Below, one piece after another: positions 2,404 through 49,133 of a DNA stretch of 64,000 nucleotides; position 1 is the stretch's first letter, and each line of letters begins with the position of its first letter. Origin of the DNA: Diadema antillarum (Eukaryota); contig NW_027271077.1 in assembly GCF_040938485.1 (NCBI RefSeq), positions 186,001-250,000 on the forward strand, in the 5' to 3' direction. A program made the position numbers and the translations under genes. The notes beneath the pieces were generated by a model. It was not told where the DNA came from. It made no database searches and worked only from the letters and a program-made list of their open reading frames with translations.

Positions 2404-3448
2404 AAAGACAAAGTAATCTGTTTTACTATCATAAGGGTCTACGTAAATATAGAGATGTCATTTTGTTCAACAGAGGAATGCACATAAAGAGACACAAACG
2501 TAGTTATTAGTACGGGCCAAAAGAATGCTTATATTGCCCTTCATTCAGCCGCTTTGTTTTTTCTTTCCCTTCTATCAGACTTCCTACTTCACGGGGAACT
2601 CCATGTGATTTTTAGAAAGGAAATGACGCATACTAATCAAGGCGTATACTATTTCAACACTCTTTGTCATTTCATTCTTCTCCTAGGCCTACTTGTAATT
2701 TGACTTGAATTAACAAAGTAGAAAAACGCGTCAGCTTTAATTTAACTATAGTCTTCCATTCTTCAATGACACATTATCCACCAAATGCAAGCAAATTTCA
2801 TATCAATTTACTCGTCAACTTTTTCGTCTCATTTTCCTATTCAAAAAATGCGGAAGTTGCTGACTTTCTTTCTTTCATGATTCCGTCCTCCCACGAGCTG
2901 TGGACACAGTTACTCTGAACTCGGCTGCTGTAATTTCACAGTAATTAATTCATTCAGCGAAGTATCCTTTGCAGAGTAGGCCGAGTGGAGAACAAGGAAG
3001 AAAGGCTCTTAGACGTAGAAACTCTCGAACGGGTCACATCGCTTATCGGGTTTCAGGCGGAGTTTCATTCACTAATCAACACCTATTCGCAGAGCGCAAA
3101 CCGAAACCCTTGTAGCGATATTAGAACACGTAGGTGTGTTTAAGCGCACGCGGCAAAACAGTTGTGCTATTTCAGCTTTAACTCATGAACTCATTAGGGA
3201 CAGAAACTTATCGTCCGAGTTTCCTTGAAGTCATTTACGGCAGCTATTGTCGAAATGGATGTTCTTGGAAAGTCGAATGAACCTTCGTTTCAGTAGCAAG
3301 GCTTGATCAGGACTTGTGTTTGCTTGCTTTGTTAGCATGATTCTTAGCAACACATTCGCATTTAATATTAACCCTCTCCCTGTCCGTTCATTCTACACGT
3401 CTCTTTCGTTAATTGTCAAGTAAATTACCAAACATTCTTCAAGTCTAG

Positions 3449-3615
3449 CAGTGGCGGATCCAGAGGGGGCGCAACCGGCGCACGCCCCCCCCCCTTTATT
3501 TTTCGTCAAAAACAAAAGAAATGAAAAGAAAAAATATGAAATGAAACCCGGAAGTGGCACCAGAAATATCAGTCACGCCCCCCCCCCCTTTACAGAATTC
3601 CTGGATCCGCCCCTG
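3449..3615. mobile_element. Short MITE with CAGTGGCGGATCC-type TIRs
   Basis: TIRs CAGTGGCGGATCC / GGATCCGCCCCTG (12/13 match). Flanking 9-mers CAAGTCTAG / CATGTCTAG (8/9) are a possible TSD. A related copy lies at 35395-35585. Confidence 0.8.
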
Positions 3616-3720
3616 CATGTCTAGCCAATAGCTTTCCTGTTGCCTTTATTTTGTGTATAGTCTCGTATCACATTTTTTTTTTTTTAGTTCGGATTTTGCC
3701 TTGCTGACCTTGCCCACATA

Positions 3721-4759
3721 TTAAAGATAATAAAAAGTTTTGGTACCTCAAAAGTGTCCTTGAATTTCCTTGTCTTAGTTTGTGTTTCAGGTTAAAGTAC
3801 CTTTCATATAACTAACAATGTGAGACTTACTCGCCCCAAAGTGCTCTCATGTCTTAGTAATCATGCAATTAACTGCGACCAGCAGCCCCATACGCATAGC
3901 GACCAGCAGTCCCATACGCATAGCGTAATCGGGCTTCGCATTGTAGCATTCAGGATCATGACAGATTTACTATCGCAGGGTAAATGTCAACTTAAAATCC
4001 CATAAATTCTTCAATTTGAAGACTTACCAATTAAGTTGAAGTATTGAAAACAGGCTTCGGGCAACGTTTGGTTCTGCCTATAGTCCCTTTCTGTTCGAAT
4101 TGATGACTGAATGTGACTCGGTCGACAGGACCTTAGGAGAGCTACATACAGTACACTGAATACTACAGCCAGTGCATGCGCAACACATCACATGCACACA
4201 AATTTCAAATCCATGAACGGATAAGATGTTTGTGTGCGCATGCGCTGGCCATGGTATCCAGTGTATGTACAATGTAGCTCTCCCAAGGTCCTCTCGACCG
4301 AGTCACATTCAGTCATCAATTCGAACAGAAAGGGACTATTGGCAGAACCAAACGTTGTTCGAAGCCTGTTTTCAATACTTCAACTTAATTGGTAAGTCTT
4401 CAAATCGAAGAAATTTTTGGATTTTAAGTTGACATATACCCGCGATACTAATTCTGTCATGATCCTGAATGCTACAATGCGAAGCCCCATTACGCTATGC
4501 GTATGGGGCTGCTGGTCGCAGTTAGCTATGCGTACAATGGGCTGCACGCTGCTGGTCGCAGTCAGTGGTTTCGTACAATATTTATCGACGCTGTACAGCG
4601 TTGGCTCTGGTACGAAACCATTATTGCATGATTACTAAGACATGAGAGCACTTTGGGGCGAGTAATTCTCACAGACAACGTACTTTAACCTGAAACACAA
4701 ACCAAGACAAGGAAATTCAGGGAAGCTTTTGAGGTACCAAAACTTTTTATTATCTTTAA
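3721..4759. mobile_element. Foldback MITE with TTAA flanks and AG...CT termini (Kolobok-like)
   Basis: TTAA at 3721-3724 and 4756-4759. The arms are reverse-complementary nearly throughout (e.g. AGATAATAAAAAGTTTTGGTACCTCAAAAG vs its complement ending 4755), meeting at a short loop near 4190-4225. An internal ~25-bp repeat GCGACCAGCAGCCCCATACGCATA occurs in both arms. Confidence 0.85.
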
Positions 4760-6195
4760 TGCTTGCATGCTGAGATGATAACAGGGTATCTTTGTCCCAG
4801 GCCAACTTAAAAAGTTTCGTATGCTTAAGACATAACACTCCAAGTACTCCCACCCCCCCTGCCTCCTCCCCCTCCATTTCCACCACCACTACCACCACCT
4901 TCCCCTTTTCACTGCCCTAAGACGGTATTTATGGGGCTTCTCGTCGTAATCACATTCATCGCCTCCAAGGGGCCGCTGCTCCGTCATCCGCAAGAACTGG
5001 GCGAGGGAAGCGAGGCACTAAGGAGCGAGATGATCGGCAAGCCATTAGTGGGTTCGGGCGCCGTCAACAAGTCACCTCCTTCGCTCTCTGCTCCCCCCTG
5101 ACTGCTGTCCTCGATTAAAGGTTCAGATGAGAGTCGTCGCTATAGTAGAAATCCATTACAAGAATGAAAAATAGTCCATTCTGCTCAGTGACGTCTTTTT
5201 CGCCGAAACGTTGTACATCCTCTTTTTGTTGTTTTTTGAAAGCACACGTTTCATCTATAACACGAAAAAACCAGCAAGATTCCATTCATTTATTCATTTT
5301 CCAGCTCCAATAGAATCATCAGAAAGTGCTTGTGTTGTCACGTTAGAACGTGCATTTAACGAAATTTTAAAGTATATAGTTAAAAAGAAATTAAAAAGAA
5401 AGATAAAACGTTTCTAAAAATGCTTGAAAAGGTAAGCATGATAGCAAGTTTAAGGAGGAAGTAAGAACGCATTGTTTCATGTATCACTCAAGAGCGATGT
5501 ATAGAAGGTGCGGTGAAATGCCTTGCAGAGCTTGTCTTGAGCTAGCAGAATTAATTTGACTATATTTTTTTAGATATATCGTAAATGTTGCTGCGTTTGC
5601 AACGAGTCGCTTCGATTTTCTTTTCTGTGATTTCAGATCAGCAAAGATGAAACGGTTCTTGTCAAAATGGTGTCATCTTTTGTCAATGTCGAATTTTGTG
5701 GCCCGCGGTTACCATCTATAACACCAAGCCTTTGAGACTGATTGACAGACAGACAACTTGTATCCCGGCCATATGAAATCTTAAACTCCACTGAACAGGT
5801 GCACTTAGACACCACAGGGGTAAGAAACAAGAACATTACAAAAGACGTATATCCCGCATGCTCTGTTTCTTGCATTGAAATGAAATCTTTCCCTTTCCAT
5901 TACTACTATTTGTAAAAAAAAAAGAAAAAAAAAGGAAAAAGATTGTATCTTTTAGACAAAGTTACAGAAAATCAGTGAAAATCAATGCGTGGCTGTCTGA
6001 TTTTGCACGCCGGCGATGGTTTGTTTACTACTTCGTCTGATCTGCACTAGAGCAATAGTTTTTCGAGGGGTACTATCAGTCATTCCTTAAAAGTCAAAAT
6101 CCCCAAGAAATAAAGTAAAAACAAAACCCCGACAAAGACTGTTATGAATGCGGTTATGCAACTGGTTGTATTTTGTAATCTTCATGTGAAAGAAA

Positions 6196-44810: not shown

Positions 44811-45876
44811 TGTTAGACAACGGCGTAATCCTGTAAGAGAGCTGGTTGAGAAGATGGTGTTACTGCGTCACATTATTCTGACAGTGGGTGGATTGTAGAA
44901 AATGCTACTGACTTCCACTTACAGATGTCAGCCATAGCAGTTTTACTTCTTTTTTTCTTTTTCTTTTTTTTTTTTTTTTTGGGGGGGGGGGGGGGGGTAT
45001 CCATTTGTTGTTGGGTTTTTTTTCCCTGGACAGTCGTGTTTGTTTGCTCGCCTACTCTTTTATTGCAGTTTTCAGCCAATCAAGCGAACTGGCGTCCCAT
45101 AGCGTGTTATACGAAGGAGGTATTCACCTGATAGGCCTACCTCCTTGGTTAAACTATGTAATACTATAATCACATTTAGTGCACATCAATCAATATCAAT
45201 CAATCAATCTCATCACCCAGGAGAACGCGTTGTATAACTTAAATCAACGTATAATGTATAGAAACAATTGCTCTCTACAATGTGTACCTTTTATGGACAG
45301 GTATACGAAGAAACGGCAAGAAAATAGGGACTTGATAGAAGGAATTGCCTTCTGGCTTCGTATAAACTTGGTAAAATCTGCCATGAGTGCGTTCTGTGGC
45401 TTGACGTAAGTTATTTGCTTAGGAAATAATGTGTGTTTTGTAACACGACATAATCAATGGTAAGAAAGAAAATATTGCGAACTTCGGATGAATGAAATTC
45501 GTGACCACAGGAAGTGCAAAGGTTTACAACTTCCGTTGCGTGTCATGCTTGTCTCGTAAATCATGCTATTCAATCCAACTTACACATCAATTTGATGTCG
45601 TCGGAACTTACGTCACTTTGTTGCATTGGGGAAAGAAAAATCCGCAGAACAGTTTTCCCACCATTAAAGATGCTCTGCTGGGCCGGTAAAAACAAGAATT
45701 ATGGCAATTCAATAGAGGAAGCAACATAGACACTATGTGTGGCATAGGCCTACACCGATTTCATGCTTTCATATATTCATTCATTTGCAAACCAAGATCC
45801 ATTGTCTAAAGGCATATATTGACGTGTCCCTTTTATAAATTAATCTATCTCGCTATTTGTCTAATATACATGGATT

Positions 45877-46136
45877 ATCATCAAAAACAAAACTGAAGCA
45901 AAATTCATGCTGTATTCACCAACAGTTTATTTAGGCACACAAATTTTCGAGCGATTGCTCTTTCTCAAGAGTTGATACTCAGAGAACAATAAAAATTCAA
46001 TTGAATTCAGTTCAATTCATTGTTATTCTCTCAGTATCAACACTTGAGAAAGAGCGAATCGCTCGAAAATTTGTGTGCCGAAATAAACTGTTGGTGAATA
46101 CTGCATGAATTTTGTTTCAGTTTTGTTATTGATGAT
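45877..46136. repeat. Near-perfect 260-bp palindrome (foldback, no TSD)
   Basis: The ~115-bp arms ATCATCAAAAACAAAACTGAAGCAAAATTCATGCTGTATTCACCAACAGTTTATTT... are complementary to ...AAATAAACTGTTGGTGAATACTGCATGAATTTTGTTTCAGTTTTGTTATTGATGAT. Confidence 0.9.
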
Positions 46137-46185
46137 TTTATCACGCCAACACGTGGACAACTTACTCAATTTTGTGTATATAATA

Positions 46186-46230
<45 letters not shown>

Positions 46231-46290
46231 TATACACTCTGTATATATAATGTTACATATATATGAATTTATAATGCATATATTATATAT

Positions 46291-47477
46291 ATAGTGCATG
46301 AGACTGAATGCACTATAACAATATAAGCACCGACAAATTCTGAATTTGCCCCGAAGGTCAGTTATATTCAATGAGGCCGCAGGCCGAATTGAATATAACT
46401 GTCTGAGGGCAAATTCAGAATTTGGAGTGCTTGGTACTTGTTATAGTGCAATAAGATGTCATGCACTATGTGTTATATAAAATAGCATACATACCCAGGC
46501 GAACCATACGAAAGGCTAGATCACTTAAGATTCTAACATGTTATACGTGCATGCCGTGTCTAGACAATACCAATTACCAGTTTCTTTGAACCTGTGTAGA
46601 CAAAATCCTGAAAATCCAAATTCAACTATCGAGTCTAGGGTCAAGATCTAGATCTTACAGTGCAAGTAACAGTACGATAGGTTAGGACCAACGTTAGATC
46701 TACGAGTGGAACGTAATGAGACCAAATAGGTCTATGGATGTAACACGTTAGAGTGACGCCCTACTTACTGCACTGGGTCCATGACTAGGACTAACGCCTT
46801 ACAATTTGTTAGATGATGTATTGTAGGATTAGGGATCTACTGGATTTAAAAACAAGGCTCGTGCCAGGCATTGTAGGCGTTGACTTTCACTTTGTGTAGC
46901 AAGTCACCATCATTGTAGTCACCATTGCTGAAAATTTGGATGCCGAGAGTGTGTTGTAGAAGTTCATAGCGTGTAGCGTGATCAAAGAGCGCTTAGCGTA
47001 TACCGTACATACGCTGCCCATCTACGGGGCACTTCCGCGTAGAATGTACGGAGAAAGCAGCACAAATCTTGGGTTGACTTGCTTAATATCCGTCGGATTG
47101 ATTCCTTCTTCAGAACAGTAGGAGTCTAAAATTCGTAGGGCGTATTTGATGACATCCTTTGTTTTCTTTGTGTCCTTATCTATAGATCAGTCTCTGTAAA
47201 AGTAGCGAACCTGCTGTTGTTTTCAGCTTCCATGTTTAAATCTACCGCTGAAAGCTAGTCCCACACAGATAAGTTGCTGGCATAGCCAGCGAGAATCGAG
47301 AATAACGATAATATCGAGCAAAGCATATCGCGGTTGTGGCGCAATCGCGTCGATAAGATGCGGGATTCAAGTACTCGATGATAAAAGTGAGGGAGCAAAA
47401 ACCGATAGTCACATCGATAGTGGGTTATCGTTTGCAATCGTTATATTTTGCGTGCACTATAACTTTTGTCATGCACT
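46291..47477 (-). mobile_element. Crypton-like (tyrosine-recombinase class) non-autonomous element
   Basis: A 179-bp terminal hairpin at 46291-46469 has the core TATATTCAATGAGGCCGCAGGCCGAATTGAATATA. The motifs TGCACTATAAC and GTCATGCACT recur at 47453-47477. A decayed recombinase-like frame lies inside, and (TA)n flanks both sides. Confidence 0.65.
46960..47233 (-). pseudogene. Frameshifted fragment resembling the N-terminal region of CryptonA/DUF3504-type tyrosine recombinases
   Basis: Stitched translation: MEAENNSRFATFTETDL / DKDTKKTKDVIKYALRILDSYCSEEGINPTDIKQVNP / DLCCFLRTFYAEV / DGQRMYGIR*AL. This follows the RFA...KD.K.T...AL..F.....E.G...L..FLR.FYAEVR.KDG..Y....IRYAL pattern I recall for this family. 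Three frameshifts and one stop; no catalytic motifs seen. Confidence 0.65.
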
Positions 47478-47504
47478 GCCGGCCTGTATCATAAGTATGT
47501 ATGC

Positions 47505-47505
<1 letters not shown>

Positions 47506-47585
<80 letters not shown>

Positions 47586-47597
47586 AAGAAAGAGAGA
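47506..47597. repeat. Compound (TA)n(GA)n microsatellite
   Basis: Directly visible. Confidence 0.95.
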
Positions 47598-48358
47598 TAA
47601 TAGCTAAACGTAGAGAAGATTGATTTAATGTATCAGTGGTGTATCATGATTTGAAATAAAAATCAGTTTTTTGCAATGTTCGCTTGTTTTTCATAATTTA
47701 GTTATTAGTAAAAACCGAAGTATTAGATATTTATTACAAAGATAATGTATGCAACAAATCCATGATGTTCATTCTCTAAGTTCAACTGAATTACTGCCTT
47801 TAAAAACTTAACCCATAGAAATCTAAAATGGAAATTATGCCGCATCATGCTGGTATTTTGTGTAATACTATGCTGAATGGCCAATTTACATCCACTGACC
47901 CTTCAAATAAACACATTTCTGGGATCTTTTAACATGTGTTTAATCACATTTACCATTCTTGATTTTAGATGATGCCCAGCTTATTCATTATAAAACTTCA
48001 GTCTGATTCAAGTTGTCATACTCATTGCCTTGACATTAAAAAAGCTTCTGTGAAAACATGAATATAATGGTTACACAGCTTACATCTGAACAAAATACCC
48101 CTTTTTGTCCCGATAAGTAGAAAACATAACGAATCATTTCCTACCTAATGGCTTCCAAGATTTGATTCACAAGATTATATGTCTTCCGAACGAATCAAAG
48201 GAAAGCAACGAAATTTCGACATAATCGTATGTATCGATACTTCAACTTATTTTAATGTGAAGGTACAAATCATTCAATTAGATATCGATTTATTTTATTT
48301 ATTTATTTTTTTGGTTAAGATATATTTTATGAAAGAAAGATATTCAGAGGGATGAAGG

Positions 48359-48593
48359 TTCAGGCGCAAGTTTCTTCACTTTGTCTCCCTCTACAAATTA
48401 GATTTGTTAAGATCACAACTGCTGATCTGTGAATTAACAAACATGTCGGAAAAAAGGAACCTGTGGGTTCGAGTCCACAGGTTCGAGTCCCACTGGTTCC
48501 TTTTTCTGACATGTTTGTTGATTTACAGATCAGTTACGATCTTAACAAATCTAATTTGTAGAGGGAAACAAAGTAAAGACACTTGCGCCTGAA
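48359..48593. repeat. 235-bp palindrome with tRNA B-box-like sequence at its centre
   Basis: Arms TTCAGGCGCAAG...CCCTCTACAAATTAGATTTGTTAAGATC... are complementary to ...GATCTTAACAAATCTAATTTGTAGAGGG...CTTGCGCCTGAA. The centre has GGTTCGAGTCC twice in tandem. Confidence 0.85.
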
Positions 48594-49133
48594 GATATAT
48601 TTTGCTGGGTTTGTTTCAAGTAGCAAGTGCATTCTCTACTGAGTGCGTGTGTGTGTGTGTGTGTGTGCGTTTTAAGAAACATAATTTTACAGATTGATGC
48701 AGGGTTGTGTAGCAAATACAATTTATTCACATCTGGAATTACTGATTTAGTATAAGGATGACTTCAGCATGCCGTCACACAAATATTCCTGTACATATCA
48801 GCTTTACCATGAATTGTGTAGAGATACCGTTTGCTCTTACAGTGGCGCGGGCAAATTGAACCCAAACGGCCATCATTCGTATTCAATCCGTATGGTTTCT
48901 TTCACTCAAGTTTCGCTCCGCCGTATCATGTTACTGATCACACAGGTTGCAACTATTACATAATACATCCGCGCTCAGATGTGACACGGAGTGTGCTTGT
49001 ATTGGAGACCAGCATTCTCAAATTACGTCCATATCTTCGCAAGATTTCGCGCGTTGTCCAACGCTGTCTCTGTACGATGCACTTTGTACAATCTTGTGTA
49101 AGAAAGGAGGTAGTATATTTGTTTGGACCTAAT

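What the first reader, a model, noticed from the sequence alone, without database searches (positions are those of the whole stretch)
46291..47477. Crypton-like element: hairpin end, recombinase-style half-sites and a decayed tyrosine-recombinase frame
Seen: a 179-bp hairpin whose two ends are each a mini-palindrome of ATAGTGCA/TGCACTAT around a 10-11 bp spacer. The same motifs (TGCACTATAAC, GTCATGCACT) reappear 1 kb away at 47453-47477. Between them on the minus strand is a frameshifted peptide (RFATFTETDL...KDTKKT...FLRTFYAEV...DG...YGIR*AL). Established: Crypton DNA transposons use a tyrosine recombinase, lack classical TSDs, and CryptonA-related DUF3504 domains were domesticated in KCTD1, ZMYM2/3/4, QRICH1 and KIAA1958. 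Tyrosine recombinase sites are typically inverted half-sites around a short spacer. Inference: this is an internally deleted element that still shows its putative recombination sites, linking the common orphan palindromes to the enzyme that may move them.
Basis: partly seen in the sequence, partly recalled or inferred. Interest (0 to 1): 0.7.

Follow-up and report, generated by a model that had tools for sequence, protein, structure and literature searches.

The report
Non-autonomous Crypton with terminal hairpin
This stretch is one decayed copy of a sea-urchin Crypton "jumping gene" that has lost its enzyme-coding core. It keeps both ends, including a 180-bp hairpin that also sits at the end of related Cryptons in other echinoderms and a scallop, so the hairpin is a testable candidate for the unknown recombination site.

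Summary
Window 46280-~47515 is one copy of a ~1.25-kb non-autonomous repeat family with at least ~470 candidate copies in a 1.75-Gb diadematoid sea-urchin genome.

I found its autonomous partner. It is a 2.05-kb element, with about 14 copies 91-100% identical to each other and five intact ORFs of 434-440 aa. It has the same hairpin end and the same opposite end. Its single ORF is a CryptonA/DUF3504-type tyrosine recombinase with R-K-H-R-H-Y intact and a Cre/QRICH1-like fold.

The window copy keeps the N-terminal ~125 codons, broken by frameshifts that the family shares. It has lost residues ~126-351, which is the whole catalytic domain.

New points:
- The ends are precisely defined, and the element inserts into TA tracts.
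- Two autonomous copies sit at targets that match the element's 3' terminus over 11 nt.
- Other hairpin elements have inserted repeatedly, exactly 3' of the TGCACTAT half-site.
- The layout [quoted passage not shown] recurs in related Cryptons of Lytechinus, Strongylocentrotus, Patiria, Holothuria and Pecten, with compensatory changes in the stem.

The literature I could read says animal Cryptons have no terminal repeats. How the enzyme uses the hairpin is inferred, not shown. The scan held no other finding on this stretch.

The parts
46280..46290 (.). Conserved TA-rich terminal tract (ATATTATATAT) at the hairpin end. It is the outermost element sequence before the flanking (TA)n.
   Evidence: Present next to ATAGTGCA in nearly all copies whatever the flank.
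46291..46470 (.). 180-bp imperfect terminal palindrome (hairpin), at the 3' end of the element relative to the ORF.
   Evidence: Fold z = -13.5. At least 481 candidate copies, the best 40 at 97-100% identity. 93.6% identical to the hairpin of the autonomous copy. Homologous hairpins in six other taxa.
46291..46318 (.). Outer mini-palindrome: 9-bp inverted TGCACTAT-type half-sites around a 10-bp spacer.
   Evidence: The arms are conserved while the spacer varies between the autonomous and non-autonomous families. Nested insertions lie exactly at 46316/46317.
46442..46470 (.). Inner mini-palindrome: the same half-sites around an 11-bp spacer.
   Evidence: Mean pairwise identity among copies is 0.95, among the highest in the element.
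46474..46494 (+). Inverted copy of the element's other terminus (TATATAAAATAGCATACATAC), just inside the hairpin.
   Evidence: Mean pairwise identity 0.975 for 46474-46496. 21 of 21 match to the 5' terminus in the autonomous copy L062, and the same relation in Strongylocentrotus, Patiria, Holothuria and Pecten.
46500..46856 (-). Diverged remnant of the 3' untranslated region. This is the least conserved part.
   Evidence: Mean pairwise identity 0.69. Only short matches to the autonomous copy.
46857..46885 (-). Remnant of the C-terminal tail of the recombinase (residues ~352-361). It marks the far side of the internal deletion.
   Evidence: blastn 89.7% and tblastn match to residues 352-361 of the L061 ORF.
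46886..47233 (-). Decayed N-terminal (QRICH1-like, non-catalytic) domain of the tyrosine recombinase, residues 1 to ~125. It is spread over three frames with stops. The start codon is at 47233-47231.
   Evidence: tblastn of the intact ORF gives E = 1.7e-15 and 2e-10. The frameshifts are shared by family members. Residues ~126-351 are absent.
47234..47452 (-). 5' untranslated / upstream region of the element.
   Evidence: Continuous 79% match to the autonomous copy. Mean pairwise identity 0.92 among copies.
47453..47477 (+). Two directly oriented half-sites (TGCACTATAAC and GTCATGCACT) near the ORF-side end.
   Evidence: Conserved in non-autonomous and autonomous copies. Insertions of other hairpin elements lie exactly at 47460/47461 in L016/L021, L053/L056 and L018/L019.
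47496..47515 (-). ORF-side (5') terminus: the inverted partner of 46474-46494, followed by the TA tract.
46163..46279 (.). TA-rich microsatellite flank, read as target sequence.
   Evidence: Most copies have (TA)n or TA-rich pentamer repeats on both sides.
47516..47540 (.). (TA)n flank, read as target sequence, followed by (GA)n.

Best explanation
Window ~46280-47515 is a non-autonomous, internally deleted copy of a CryptonA-type DNA transposon in a diadematoid sea urchin.

The autonomous partner is 2.05 kb and carries a single 434-aa ORF, a two-domain tyrosine recombinase. Its layout is: 5' terminus, ~300-bp leader, ORF, ~250-bp trailer, inverted copy of the 5' terminus, 180-bp hairpin, TA tract. 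The window copy keeps both ends and the first ~125 codons. It has lost the catalytic domain, so it can only move if the enzyme from an autonomous copy acts on it.

Shown here:
- the homology between the window copy and the autonomous element;
- the position of the internal deletion;
- the exact ends of the element;
- copy numbers of both families;
- intact catalytic residues in the autonomous ORF;
- TA-tract targets;
- absence of the element from paralogous sites;
- repeated insertions exactly 3' of TGCACTAT;
- the same architecture in other taxa.

Inferred, by analogy with the Goodwin model for Cryptons:
- The recombinase binds the TGCACTAT half-sites.
- The element leaves as a circle. In that circle the hairpin, flanked by the two inverted termini, would form a ~225-bp palindrome with the TA-rich junction on one side.
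- The circle recombines with a TA tract or a CACTAT-TA pseudo-site.
For: Family and boundaries:
- At least 467 candidate copies of the body and at least 481 of the hairpin.
- Homology among copies spans 46278-47539.

Autonomous partner:
- L061:260-2340 matches both ends of the window copy.
- The catalytic region has 14 copies at 91-100% identity.
- There are nine full-length copies plus two more with a partly deleted hairpin. Five of these eleven (L062, L063, L064, L065, L071) have intact 434-440-aa ORFs.

Enzyme:
- Pfam gives DUF3504 at 30.5 bits (cut-off 29.7), Phage_integrase at 25.7 and QRICH1 at 27.2.
- 199 homologues, the best at 98% identity in Diadema setosum. Others are annotated ZMYM2-like or KIAA1958-like.
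- R175, E178, K209, H298, R301, H324 and Y333 are invariant or nearly so in a 26-sequence alignment.
- Foldseek's top hits are QRICH1, Cre, Tn1549 integrase, XerA, lambda Int and IntI.

Internal deletion: residues ~126-351 are missing, and the frameshifts are shared by family members.

Mobility and target:
- The L062 copy is absent from about two dozen paralogous copies of the repeat it sits in. The flanking alignments overlap by 16-20 bp at a CACTAT...TATATATA site.
- In L062 and L073 the sequence at the 5' junction is identical over 11 nt to the element's 3' terminus.
- Copies flanked by TA-rich pentamer repeats have the same repeat on both sides.

Half-sites:
- They are conserved.
- At least five nested insertions lie exactly at TGCACTAT|AAC, at two different positions in the element.

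Conservation across taxa:
- A hairpin lies 110-530 bp downstream of the stop codon in six other taxa.
- The hairpins share homologous sequence blocks.
- 25 of 30 consensus pairs show compensatory changes.
- The inner flank is an inverted copy of the 5' terminus in five taxa.

Literature: an active Chlamydomonas Crypton ends in CACCG and targets CAYCG (PMC9977147).
Against: - No circle junction, excision footprint or allelic empty site was observed. The public runs gave only short contigs.
- The Pfam scores are marginal.
- The insertion points lie outside the inverted half-sites rather than in their 10-11-bp spacer. That is not how classical tyrosine-recombinase core sites behave.
- Because both ends are TA-rich, a short TA or TAT target-site duplication cannot be excluded.
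- Some of the nested-insertion loci may be allelic haplotigs rather than independent events.
- The cross-species loci are single copies, not curated families. The oyster and Asterias loci showed no such hairpin, and the coral one lacks the terminal inverted match.
Confidence: 0.9

Rival explanations
1. The hairpin is a recombination substrate in folded, single-stranded form, like integron attC sites or the CTX phage attP hairpin. One strand exchange followed by replication would then give copy-number gain. This refines the mechanism rather than changing what the element is.
For: - Structure is conserved more than sequence, with compensatory changes in 25 of 30 pairs.
- In the folded form the half-sites make two duplex boxes separated by an unpaired spacer.
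- Some arm mismatches recur across the aligned taxa, by my reading of the alignment.
- IntI is among the fold hits.
- Chlamydomonas Cryptons gained copies despite clean excisions (PMC9977147).
Against: - There is no direct evidence for single-stranded intermediates.
- A double-stranded palindrome or cruciform explains the same data.
- Cre-like enzymes act on duplex DNA.
- Symmetry can also be kept by templated repair between the arms.
Confidence: 0.15
2. The hairpin mainly serves the transcript. It would be a 3'-UTR structure, a terminator or a small-RNA precursor that regulates the element, and not a DNA recombination site.
For: It lies downstream of the stop codon in every taxon examined. 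It folds strongly.
Against: - It is retained, and is among the best conserved parts, in non-autonomous copies that have no working ORF.
- It sits at the extreme terminus.
- Its inner flank is the inverted copy of the other terminus.
- Insertions cluster at its half-sites.
- No RNA run held the element. That is weak evidence.
Confidence: 0.07
3. The element is moved by some other enzyme and the recombinase ORF is cargo. Candidates are a TA-targeting DDE transposase acting on the 21-bp inverted termini, or a rolling-circle Rep enzyme acting at the hairpin.
For: - The element has a TA target, subterminal inverted repeats and head-to-tail tandem pairs.
- A 2-3-bp TA or TAT duplication cannot be excluded.
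Against: - The only ORF in the 2.05-kb unit is the recombinase, with its catalytic residues kept in several young copies.
- The same ORF-plus-hairpin unit of 2.05-2.25 kb recurs in taxa from two phyla.
- The ends are asymmetric, with the hairpin lying outside one inverted repeat.
- Insertions of the second and third hairpin families show no duplication.
Confidence: 0.04
4. The hairpin and the ORF fragment are unrelated pieces that were inserted independently and lie together by chance.
For: The genome is rich in palindromic repeats. An unrelated one lies 150 bp away at 45877-46136.
Against: All 40 scored hairpin matches lie on copies that continue past the hairpin into the body. Two of them (L033, L034) stop within ~50-140 bp and look truncated. 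The autonomous copy and the relatives in six other taxa have the same arrangement.
Confidence: 0.01

Closest known systems
CryptonA elements and their non-autonomous derivatives (Kojima & Jurka 2011, PMC3212892; for example CryptonA-1_OL with CryptonA-1N1_OL, and CryptonI-1N1_RPro)
   Same: - A single ORF encoding a tyrosine recombinase related to DUF3504/ZMYM/QRICH1/KIAA1958.
- No reverse transcriptase and no DDE transposase.
- No C-terminal GCR1_C domain.
- Non-autonomous copies share both ends with the autonomous element and far outnumber it.
- Cryptons are already known from sea urchins.
   Different: That paper reports no terminal repeats of any kind in animal Cryptons. Here the ends are sharply defined. 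There is a 180-bp terminal palindrome, a 21-bp inverted copy of the other terminus, repeated 8-9-bp half-sites, and insertion into TA tracts.
Fungal and algal Cryptons under the Goodwin integration model (Goodwin et al. 2003, as cited in PMC3212892 and PMC9977147; CryptonF-1_cRei)
   Same: [quoted passage not shown] Here the terminus CACTATATATA matches the targets of L062 and L073, and TA tracts lie on both sides.
   Different: The enzymes belong to a different group (CryptonF, with the GCR1_C domain). No long palindrome has been described there. The target motifs are 5-6 bp long and not microsatellite-like.
Cre/loxP and other simple tyrosine-recombinase sites
   Same: Two-domain Cre-like fold with R-K-H-R-H-Y. 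Inverted 8-9-bp repeats around a short spacer.
   Different: The spacers are 10-11 bp rather than 6-8 bp. The observed junctions lie outside the inverted repeats. One nested junction does create TGCACTAT-7 bp-ATAGTGCA.
Integron attC sites and the CTX phage attP(+) hairpin (folded single-strand substrates of tyrosine recombinases)
   Same: Imperfect palindromes of ~60-180 nt whose structure is conserved more than their sequence. When folded they show two binding boxes separated by an unpaired stretch.
   Different: Those are bacterial systems. Nothing here shows that the Crypton hairpin acts as a single strand. This is a resemblance only.
DIRS1-type retrotransposons (inverted terminal repeats plus an internal complementary region)
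   Same: A tyrosine recombinase, with terminal sequences arranged so that the joined ends form an extended complementary structure.
   Different: DIRS elements encode reverse transcriptase and replicate through RNA. This element has no such gene.

Membership tests
Crypton (tyrosine-recombinase DNA transposon) | Encodes a tyrosine recombinase and no reverse transcriptase or DDE transposase | tested here: met
   The 2.05-kb autonomous copies hold one long sense ORF of 434 aa. The other ORFs in the unit are short antisense or overlapping frames. Pfam finds only DUF3504, Phage_integrase and QRICH1.
Crypton (tyrosine-recombinase DNA transposon) | Catalytic R-H-R-Y (plus Lys and the second His) present | tested here: met
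   R175, K209, H298, R301, H324 and Y333 are invariant or at least 90% conserved in a 26-sequence alignment. The fold matches Cre and QRICH1 with probability 1.0.
Crypton (tyrosine-recombinase DNA transposon) | No long terminal repeats; short direct repeats at both ends; no classical target-site duplication | tested here: inconclusive
   TA-tract direct repeats of 6-11 nt flank copies that lie outside microsatellites. Insertions of the second and third hairpin families show no duplication. However, the element also has a subterminal 21-bp inverted repeat and a terminal palindrome, which the classical description lacks. A TA or TAT duplication cannot be excluded.
Crypton (tyrosine-recombinase DNA transposon) | Moves through an excised circular intermediate | not testable with these tools
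   Only short Logan contigs were available. Head-to-tail tandem pairs exist in the genome, so a back-joined read would not prove a circle.
CryptonA group | Recombinase related to DUF3504 / ZMYM / QRICH1 / KIAA1958, with no C-terminal DNA-binding domain | tested here: met
   DUF3504 is over Pfam's cut-off. The QRICH1 structure is the top fold hit. Homologues are annotated ZMYM2-like, KIAA1958-like or KCTD1. The C-terminal ~90 residues are predicted to be disordered. No phylogeny against Repbase reference Cryptons was made.
Non-autonomous derivative of that Crypton (the window copy) | Shares both termini with the autonomous element and lacks a working enzyme gene | tested here: met
   The hairpin end is 93.6% identical and the ORF-side 615 bp is 79% identical to L061. 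Residues ~126-351 are deleted, and stops and frameshifts are present.
MITE / foldback element moved by a DDE transposase | Symmetric terminal inverted repeats at both extreme ends and a fixed-length target-site duplication | tested here: not met
   The extreme ends are not inverted copies of each other. The inverted partner of the 5' terminus lies inside the hairpin. No fixed duplication was seen.
Helitron / Helentron | Rep-helicase gene in autonomous copies, a short 3' hairpin, and insertion at AT or TT | tested here: not met
   The full-length copies carry only the tyrosine recombinase. The hairpin is 180 bp, not 16-20 bp.

The most novel reading that the evidence does not exclude
The 150-190-nt terminal hairpin is the ancestral attachment site of a whole clade of animal Cryptons, and the recombinase uses it in folded form, as a cruciform or a single strand, much like integron attC or the CTX phage attP. 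Folding would bring two TGCACTAT-type boxes together around an unpaired spacer. A single strand exchange resolved by replication would explain why Cryptons gain copies and why hairpin-only derivatives (the genome's 'orphan palindromes') can spread. If so, this would be the first eukaryotic transposon known to use a structured DNA recombination site.
Probability: 0.15. Interest if true: 0.85.

Novelty: new variant of a known kind. Interest (0 to 1): 0.6.

Why it matters
Cryptons gave rise to several animal genes, including ZMYM2/3/4, QRICH1, KCTD1 and KIAA1958. Even so, their ends and recombination sites in animals have been described as undetectable, and their mechanism is still a model borrowed from bacteria.

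This family offers the following:
- Sharply defined ends.
- A young autonomous element with intact enzyme genes.
- Hundreds of non-autonomous copies.
- Candidate binding half-sites, supported independently by repeated site-specific nested insertions.
- A terminal hairpin architecture that recurs in sea urchins, a starfish, a sea cucumber and a scallop.

Together these turn [quoted passage not shown] into a bench experiment with named sequences. They may also explain part of the abundant palindromic repeats in echinoderm genomes.

Tried and rejected
- Pfam on the window's own peptide pieces, and on the longest natural open pieces from other copies, gave nothing meaningful. These pieces cover only the N-terminal domain.
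- A sequence search of PDB with the intact ORF found nothing. The fold search was needed.
- Looking for an orthologous or allelic empty site of the window copy in four public runs failed. The Logan contigs break at the repeats and none bridges the element. In organism B (runs X3, X4) the right flank is almost uncovered, so no comparison was possible. No listed run is on record as RNA, so expression is unknown.
These included a tandem array on contig 104 and families 65% identical to this one. As a result, I could not find the autonomous partners of the second and third hairpin families in this genome.
- Two Diadema antillarum proteins had no contig on record.
- The oyster locus L078 and the multi-exon Asterias locus L077 showed no hairpin at the expected place. 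The coral locus L082 has a palindrome but no terminal inverted match.
- I did not run the shuffle control of the count of structure pairs, to avoid typing a long bracket string.
- I considered the classical reading, with the crossover inside the 10-11-bp spacer of each mini-palindrome, and set it aside. All observed junctions lie outside the half-sites.
- I built no consensus and no repaired frame. Only natural copies were used.
Full report
**What is there**

The sequence at 46291-46470 is an imperfect 180-nt palindrome. Folded as single-stranded DNA it gives -60.3 kcal/mol, against -17.4 +/- 3.2 for shuffles (z = -13.5). Each base of the hairpin is a small inverted repeat of TGCACTAT-type half-sites around 10-11 bp. 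The motifs TGCACTATAAC and GTCATGCACT recur at 47453-47477. Five of the window's seven TGCACTAT occurrences fall in this 1.2 kb, where shuffles give 2.2 for the whole window.

**It is a repeat family**

The window is contig 189:186001-250000 of a 1.75-Gb assembly.
- The 1-kb body has at least 467 candidate matches. The scored ones are 75-98% identical.
- The hairpin has at least 481 candidate matches, the best 40 at 97-100%.
- In the fetched loci, similarity to the window runs from about 46278 to 47539 and then stops. Hairpin and body are adjacent in essentially every copy.
- Stops and frameshifts in the peptide are shared by divergent copies, so they predate the amplification.
- Regional identities among 31 aligned copies are highest for the inner mini-palindrome (0.95), the 21 bp just inside the hairpin (0.975) and the ORF-side 250 bp (0.92). 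They are lowest for the middle part (0.69).

**The autonomous partner**

A Pfam DUF3504 scan of the genome gave 72 hits. One lay 1.8 kb from a hairpin on contig 124. That stretch (L061) holds a 2.08-kb unit. Its first 640 bp match window 47527-46913 at 79%, and its last 230 bp match the window hairpin at 93.6%. Between them is an open frame that starts with the same MEAENN... peptide.

The catalytic part of this unit occurs 14 times at 91-100% identity. Nine copies are full length, and two more have a partly deleted hairpin. Five of these eleven have intact ORFs of 434-440 aa.

The protein has these properties:
- It passes Pfam's cut-off for DUF3504 (30.5 against 29.7 bits).
- It comes close for Phage_integrase (25.7 against 27.1) and for the QRICH1 N-domain (27.2 against 30.8).
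- It has 199 relatives in the word search. The best is 98% identical, from Diadema setosum, so the host is that urchin or a close relative. Others are annotated ZMYM2-like, KIAA1958-like or KCTD1.
- In a 26-sequence alignment R175, E178, K209, H298, R301, H324 and Y333 are invariant or nearly so.
- An AlphaFold model (mean pLDDT 73) matches QRICH1, Cre, Tn1549 integrase, XerA, lambda Int and IntI.

This is a CryptonA-type tyrosine recombinase.

**What the window copy has lost**

Against the intact ORF, the window keeps residues 1 to ~125 (47233-46886, E = 1.7e-15) and a 10-residue piece at 352-361 (46885-46857). Residues ~126-351, the whole catalytic domain, are missing. Taken alone, the remnant hits no Pfam family. 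"Decayed tyrosine-recombinase frame" is therefore true by descent, but the part that remains is the non-catalytic N-terminal domain.

**Ends and targets**

At the hairpin end, nearly all copies read flank, ATATTATATAT, ATAGTGCA... At the other end they read ...GTATGTATGCTAT, TTTATAT(A), flank. Most copies lie in (TA)n. Some lie in TA-rich pentamer repeats that continue on both sides, which shows insertion into a repeat that was already there.

The L062 autonomous copy sits inside another repeat. About two dozen paralogous copies of that repeat lack the 2.05 kb. Their two flank alignments overlap by 16-20 bp at a CACTAT...TATATATA site.

In L062 and L073 the sequence at the 5' junction is identical over 11 nt to the element's own 3' terminus: CACTATATATA and CATGCACTATA. 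This is what the Goodwin model predicts. It parallels the active Chlamydomonas Crypton, which ends in CACCG and targets CAYCG (PMC9977147).

**Independent support for the half-sites**

Among about 45 non-redundant copies there are several nested insertions exactly after TGCACTAT, in the 11-mer TGCACTATAAC, at two different places in the element.
- At 46316/46317: a same-family copy in L006, and a second hairpin family in L007 and L011.
- At 47460/47461: a 1186-bp element in L016/L021, the same family in L053/L056, and a 497-bp element in L018/L019.

Some of these pairs may be haplotigs of one locus. The inserted elements begin with a TA-rich end followed by a 165-185-bp hairpin of their own. 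The L006 junction reads TGCACTAT, 7 bp, ATAGTGCA. All junctions lie outside the inverted half-sites, not in the 10-11-bp spacers.

**A conserved architecture**

The 21 bp just inside the hairpin are the exact inverted copy of the other terminus (46474-46494 against 47496-47515; 21 of 21 in L062). In a circle or a head-to-tail pair, the hairpin and the two termini would therefore form a ~225-bp palindrome with the TA junction on one side. Head-to-tail pairs do exist.

I fetched loci for related proteins from other species. A 150-190-bp palindrome lies 110-530 bp downstream of the stop codon at these places:

| Species | Locus and position |
|---|---|
| Lytechinus variegatus | L075:4687-4870, with (TA)n at both ends |
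| Strongylocentrotus purpuratus | L076:4368-4552 |
| Patiria miniata | L079:3802-3965 |
| Holothuria leucospilota | L080:3644-3807, preceded by the hairpin of a tandem neighbour |
| Pecten maximus | L081:3640-3787 |
| Oculina patagonica | L082:3454-3616 |

The oyster and Asterias loci showed no such hairpin.

The hairpins align with shared blocks at the inner flank, at mid-stem, at the tip (CTCGGC, 2-4 nt, GCCTCG) and at the outer end. 25 of 30 consensus pairs show compensatory changes.

The inverted relation between the inner flank and a site 190-345 bp upstream of the ATG holds in Strongylocentrotus (22 of 24), Patiria (35 of 37), Holothuria (16 of 16) and Pecten (21 of 22). This gives units of 2.05-2.25 kb. 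The two nested Diadema hairpin families resemble the Holothuria and Strongylocentrotus hairpins.

**Literature**

Kojima and Jurka (PMC3212892) state that Crypton boundaries are hard to define and that no terminal repeats were found in animal Cryptons. They do describe non-autonomous Cryptons. [quoted passage not shown] Two full-text searches found no description of a Crypton terminal palindrome. Repbase was not available, so earlier notice there cannot be excluded.

**Mechanism**

Shown: the identity of the element, the internal deletion, the ends, target preferences, site-specific nested insertions, and conservation of the architecture.

Inferred: the recombinase binds the TGCACTAT-type boxes, the element circularises, and it recombines with TA tracts or CACTAT-TA pseudo-sites. 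Whether the hairpin acts as duplex, cruciform or single strand is open.

**Verdict**

The element is a new variant of a known kind. Its value lies in giving animal Cryptons defined ends and a testable candidate attachment site.

Noticed in passing
window 45877-46136: A 260-bp near-perfect palindrome (80-nt arms at 95%, plus inner 36-nt arms) lies just upstream. It shares no motifs with the Crypton hairpins. In public runs its word depth is several hundred times that of the unique flank, so it is a separate high-copy MITE-like family.
   Followed up: partly
window 48302-48600: A very high-copy repeat. Its word depth is roughly 2,000-4,500 times that of the unique flank in all four runs, and it has an internal inverted structure.
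   Followed up: no
L002 = contig 189:1233606-1237625: A segmental duplicate of window ~44964-47871, in inverted orientation and about 1 Mb away on the same contig. It is 96% identical and includes both the Crypton copy and the neighbouring palindrome.
   Followed up: no
L016:315-1501, L053:2674 onward, L018:3278-3775, L007:868 onward, L011:524-1343: Two further families of hairpin-ended elements, about 0.5-1.2 kb long, starting TATAC(A/T)AAT... with a 165-185-bp hairpin. They are inserted exactly after TGCACTAT in Crypton copies. Their hairpins resemble those of the Holothuria and Strongylocentrotus Cryptons. I did not find their autonomous partners in this genome.
   Followed up: partly
contig 104:750907-756490 (not fetched): Three DUF3504 open frames of 529 aa spaced 2,592-2,593 bp apart. 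This looks like a head-to-tail tandem array of another Crypton family.
   Followed up: no
L062:1-846 and 2916-3801: The autonomous copy on contig 278 sits inside another interspersed repeat of at least 1.7 kb, with about two dozen copies at 90-96% identity. That repeat has its own ~265-bp inverted segment at L062:285-549.
   Followed up: no
L080:1474-1673 and 4777-4940: The Holothuria locus carries further copies of the same ~165-200-bp hairpin, upstream and downstream of the Crypton unit. The upstream one directly abuts the 5' terminus, which is a tandem or solo-hairpin arrangement.
   Followed up: partly
window 47603-48398: The unique right flank of the element is covered in runs of organism A (X1, X2) but almost uncovered in organism B (X3, X4): two short stretches at low depth only. 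The left flank is present in both at about 95% identity.
   Followed up: no
several locus pairs (contigs 1206/1027, 993/2040, 354/312, 2854/297, 778/605): These locus pairs gave identical or matching hit tables and look like the two haplotypes of one site. The 1.75-Gb assembly therefore probably holds both haplotypes for much of the genome, and copy counts are inflated accordingly.
   Followed up: no
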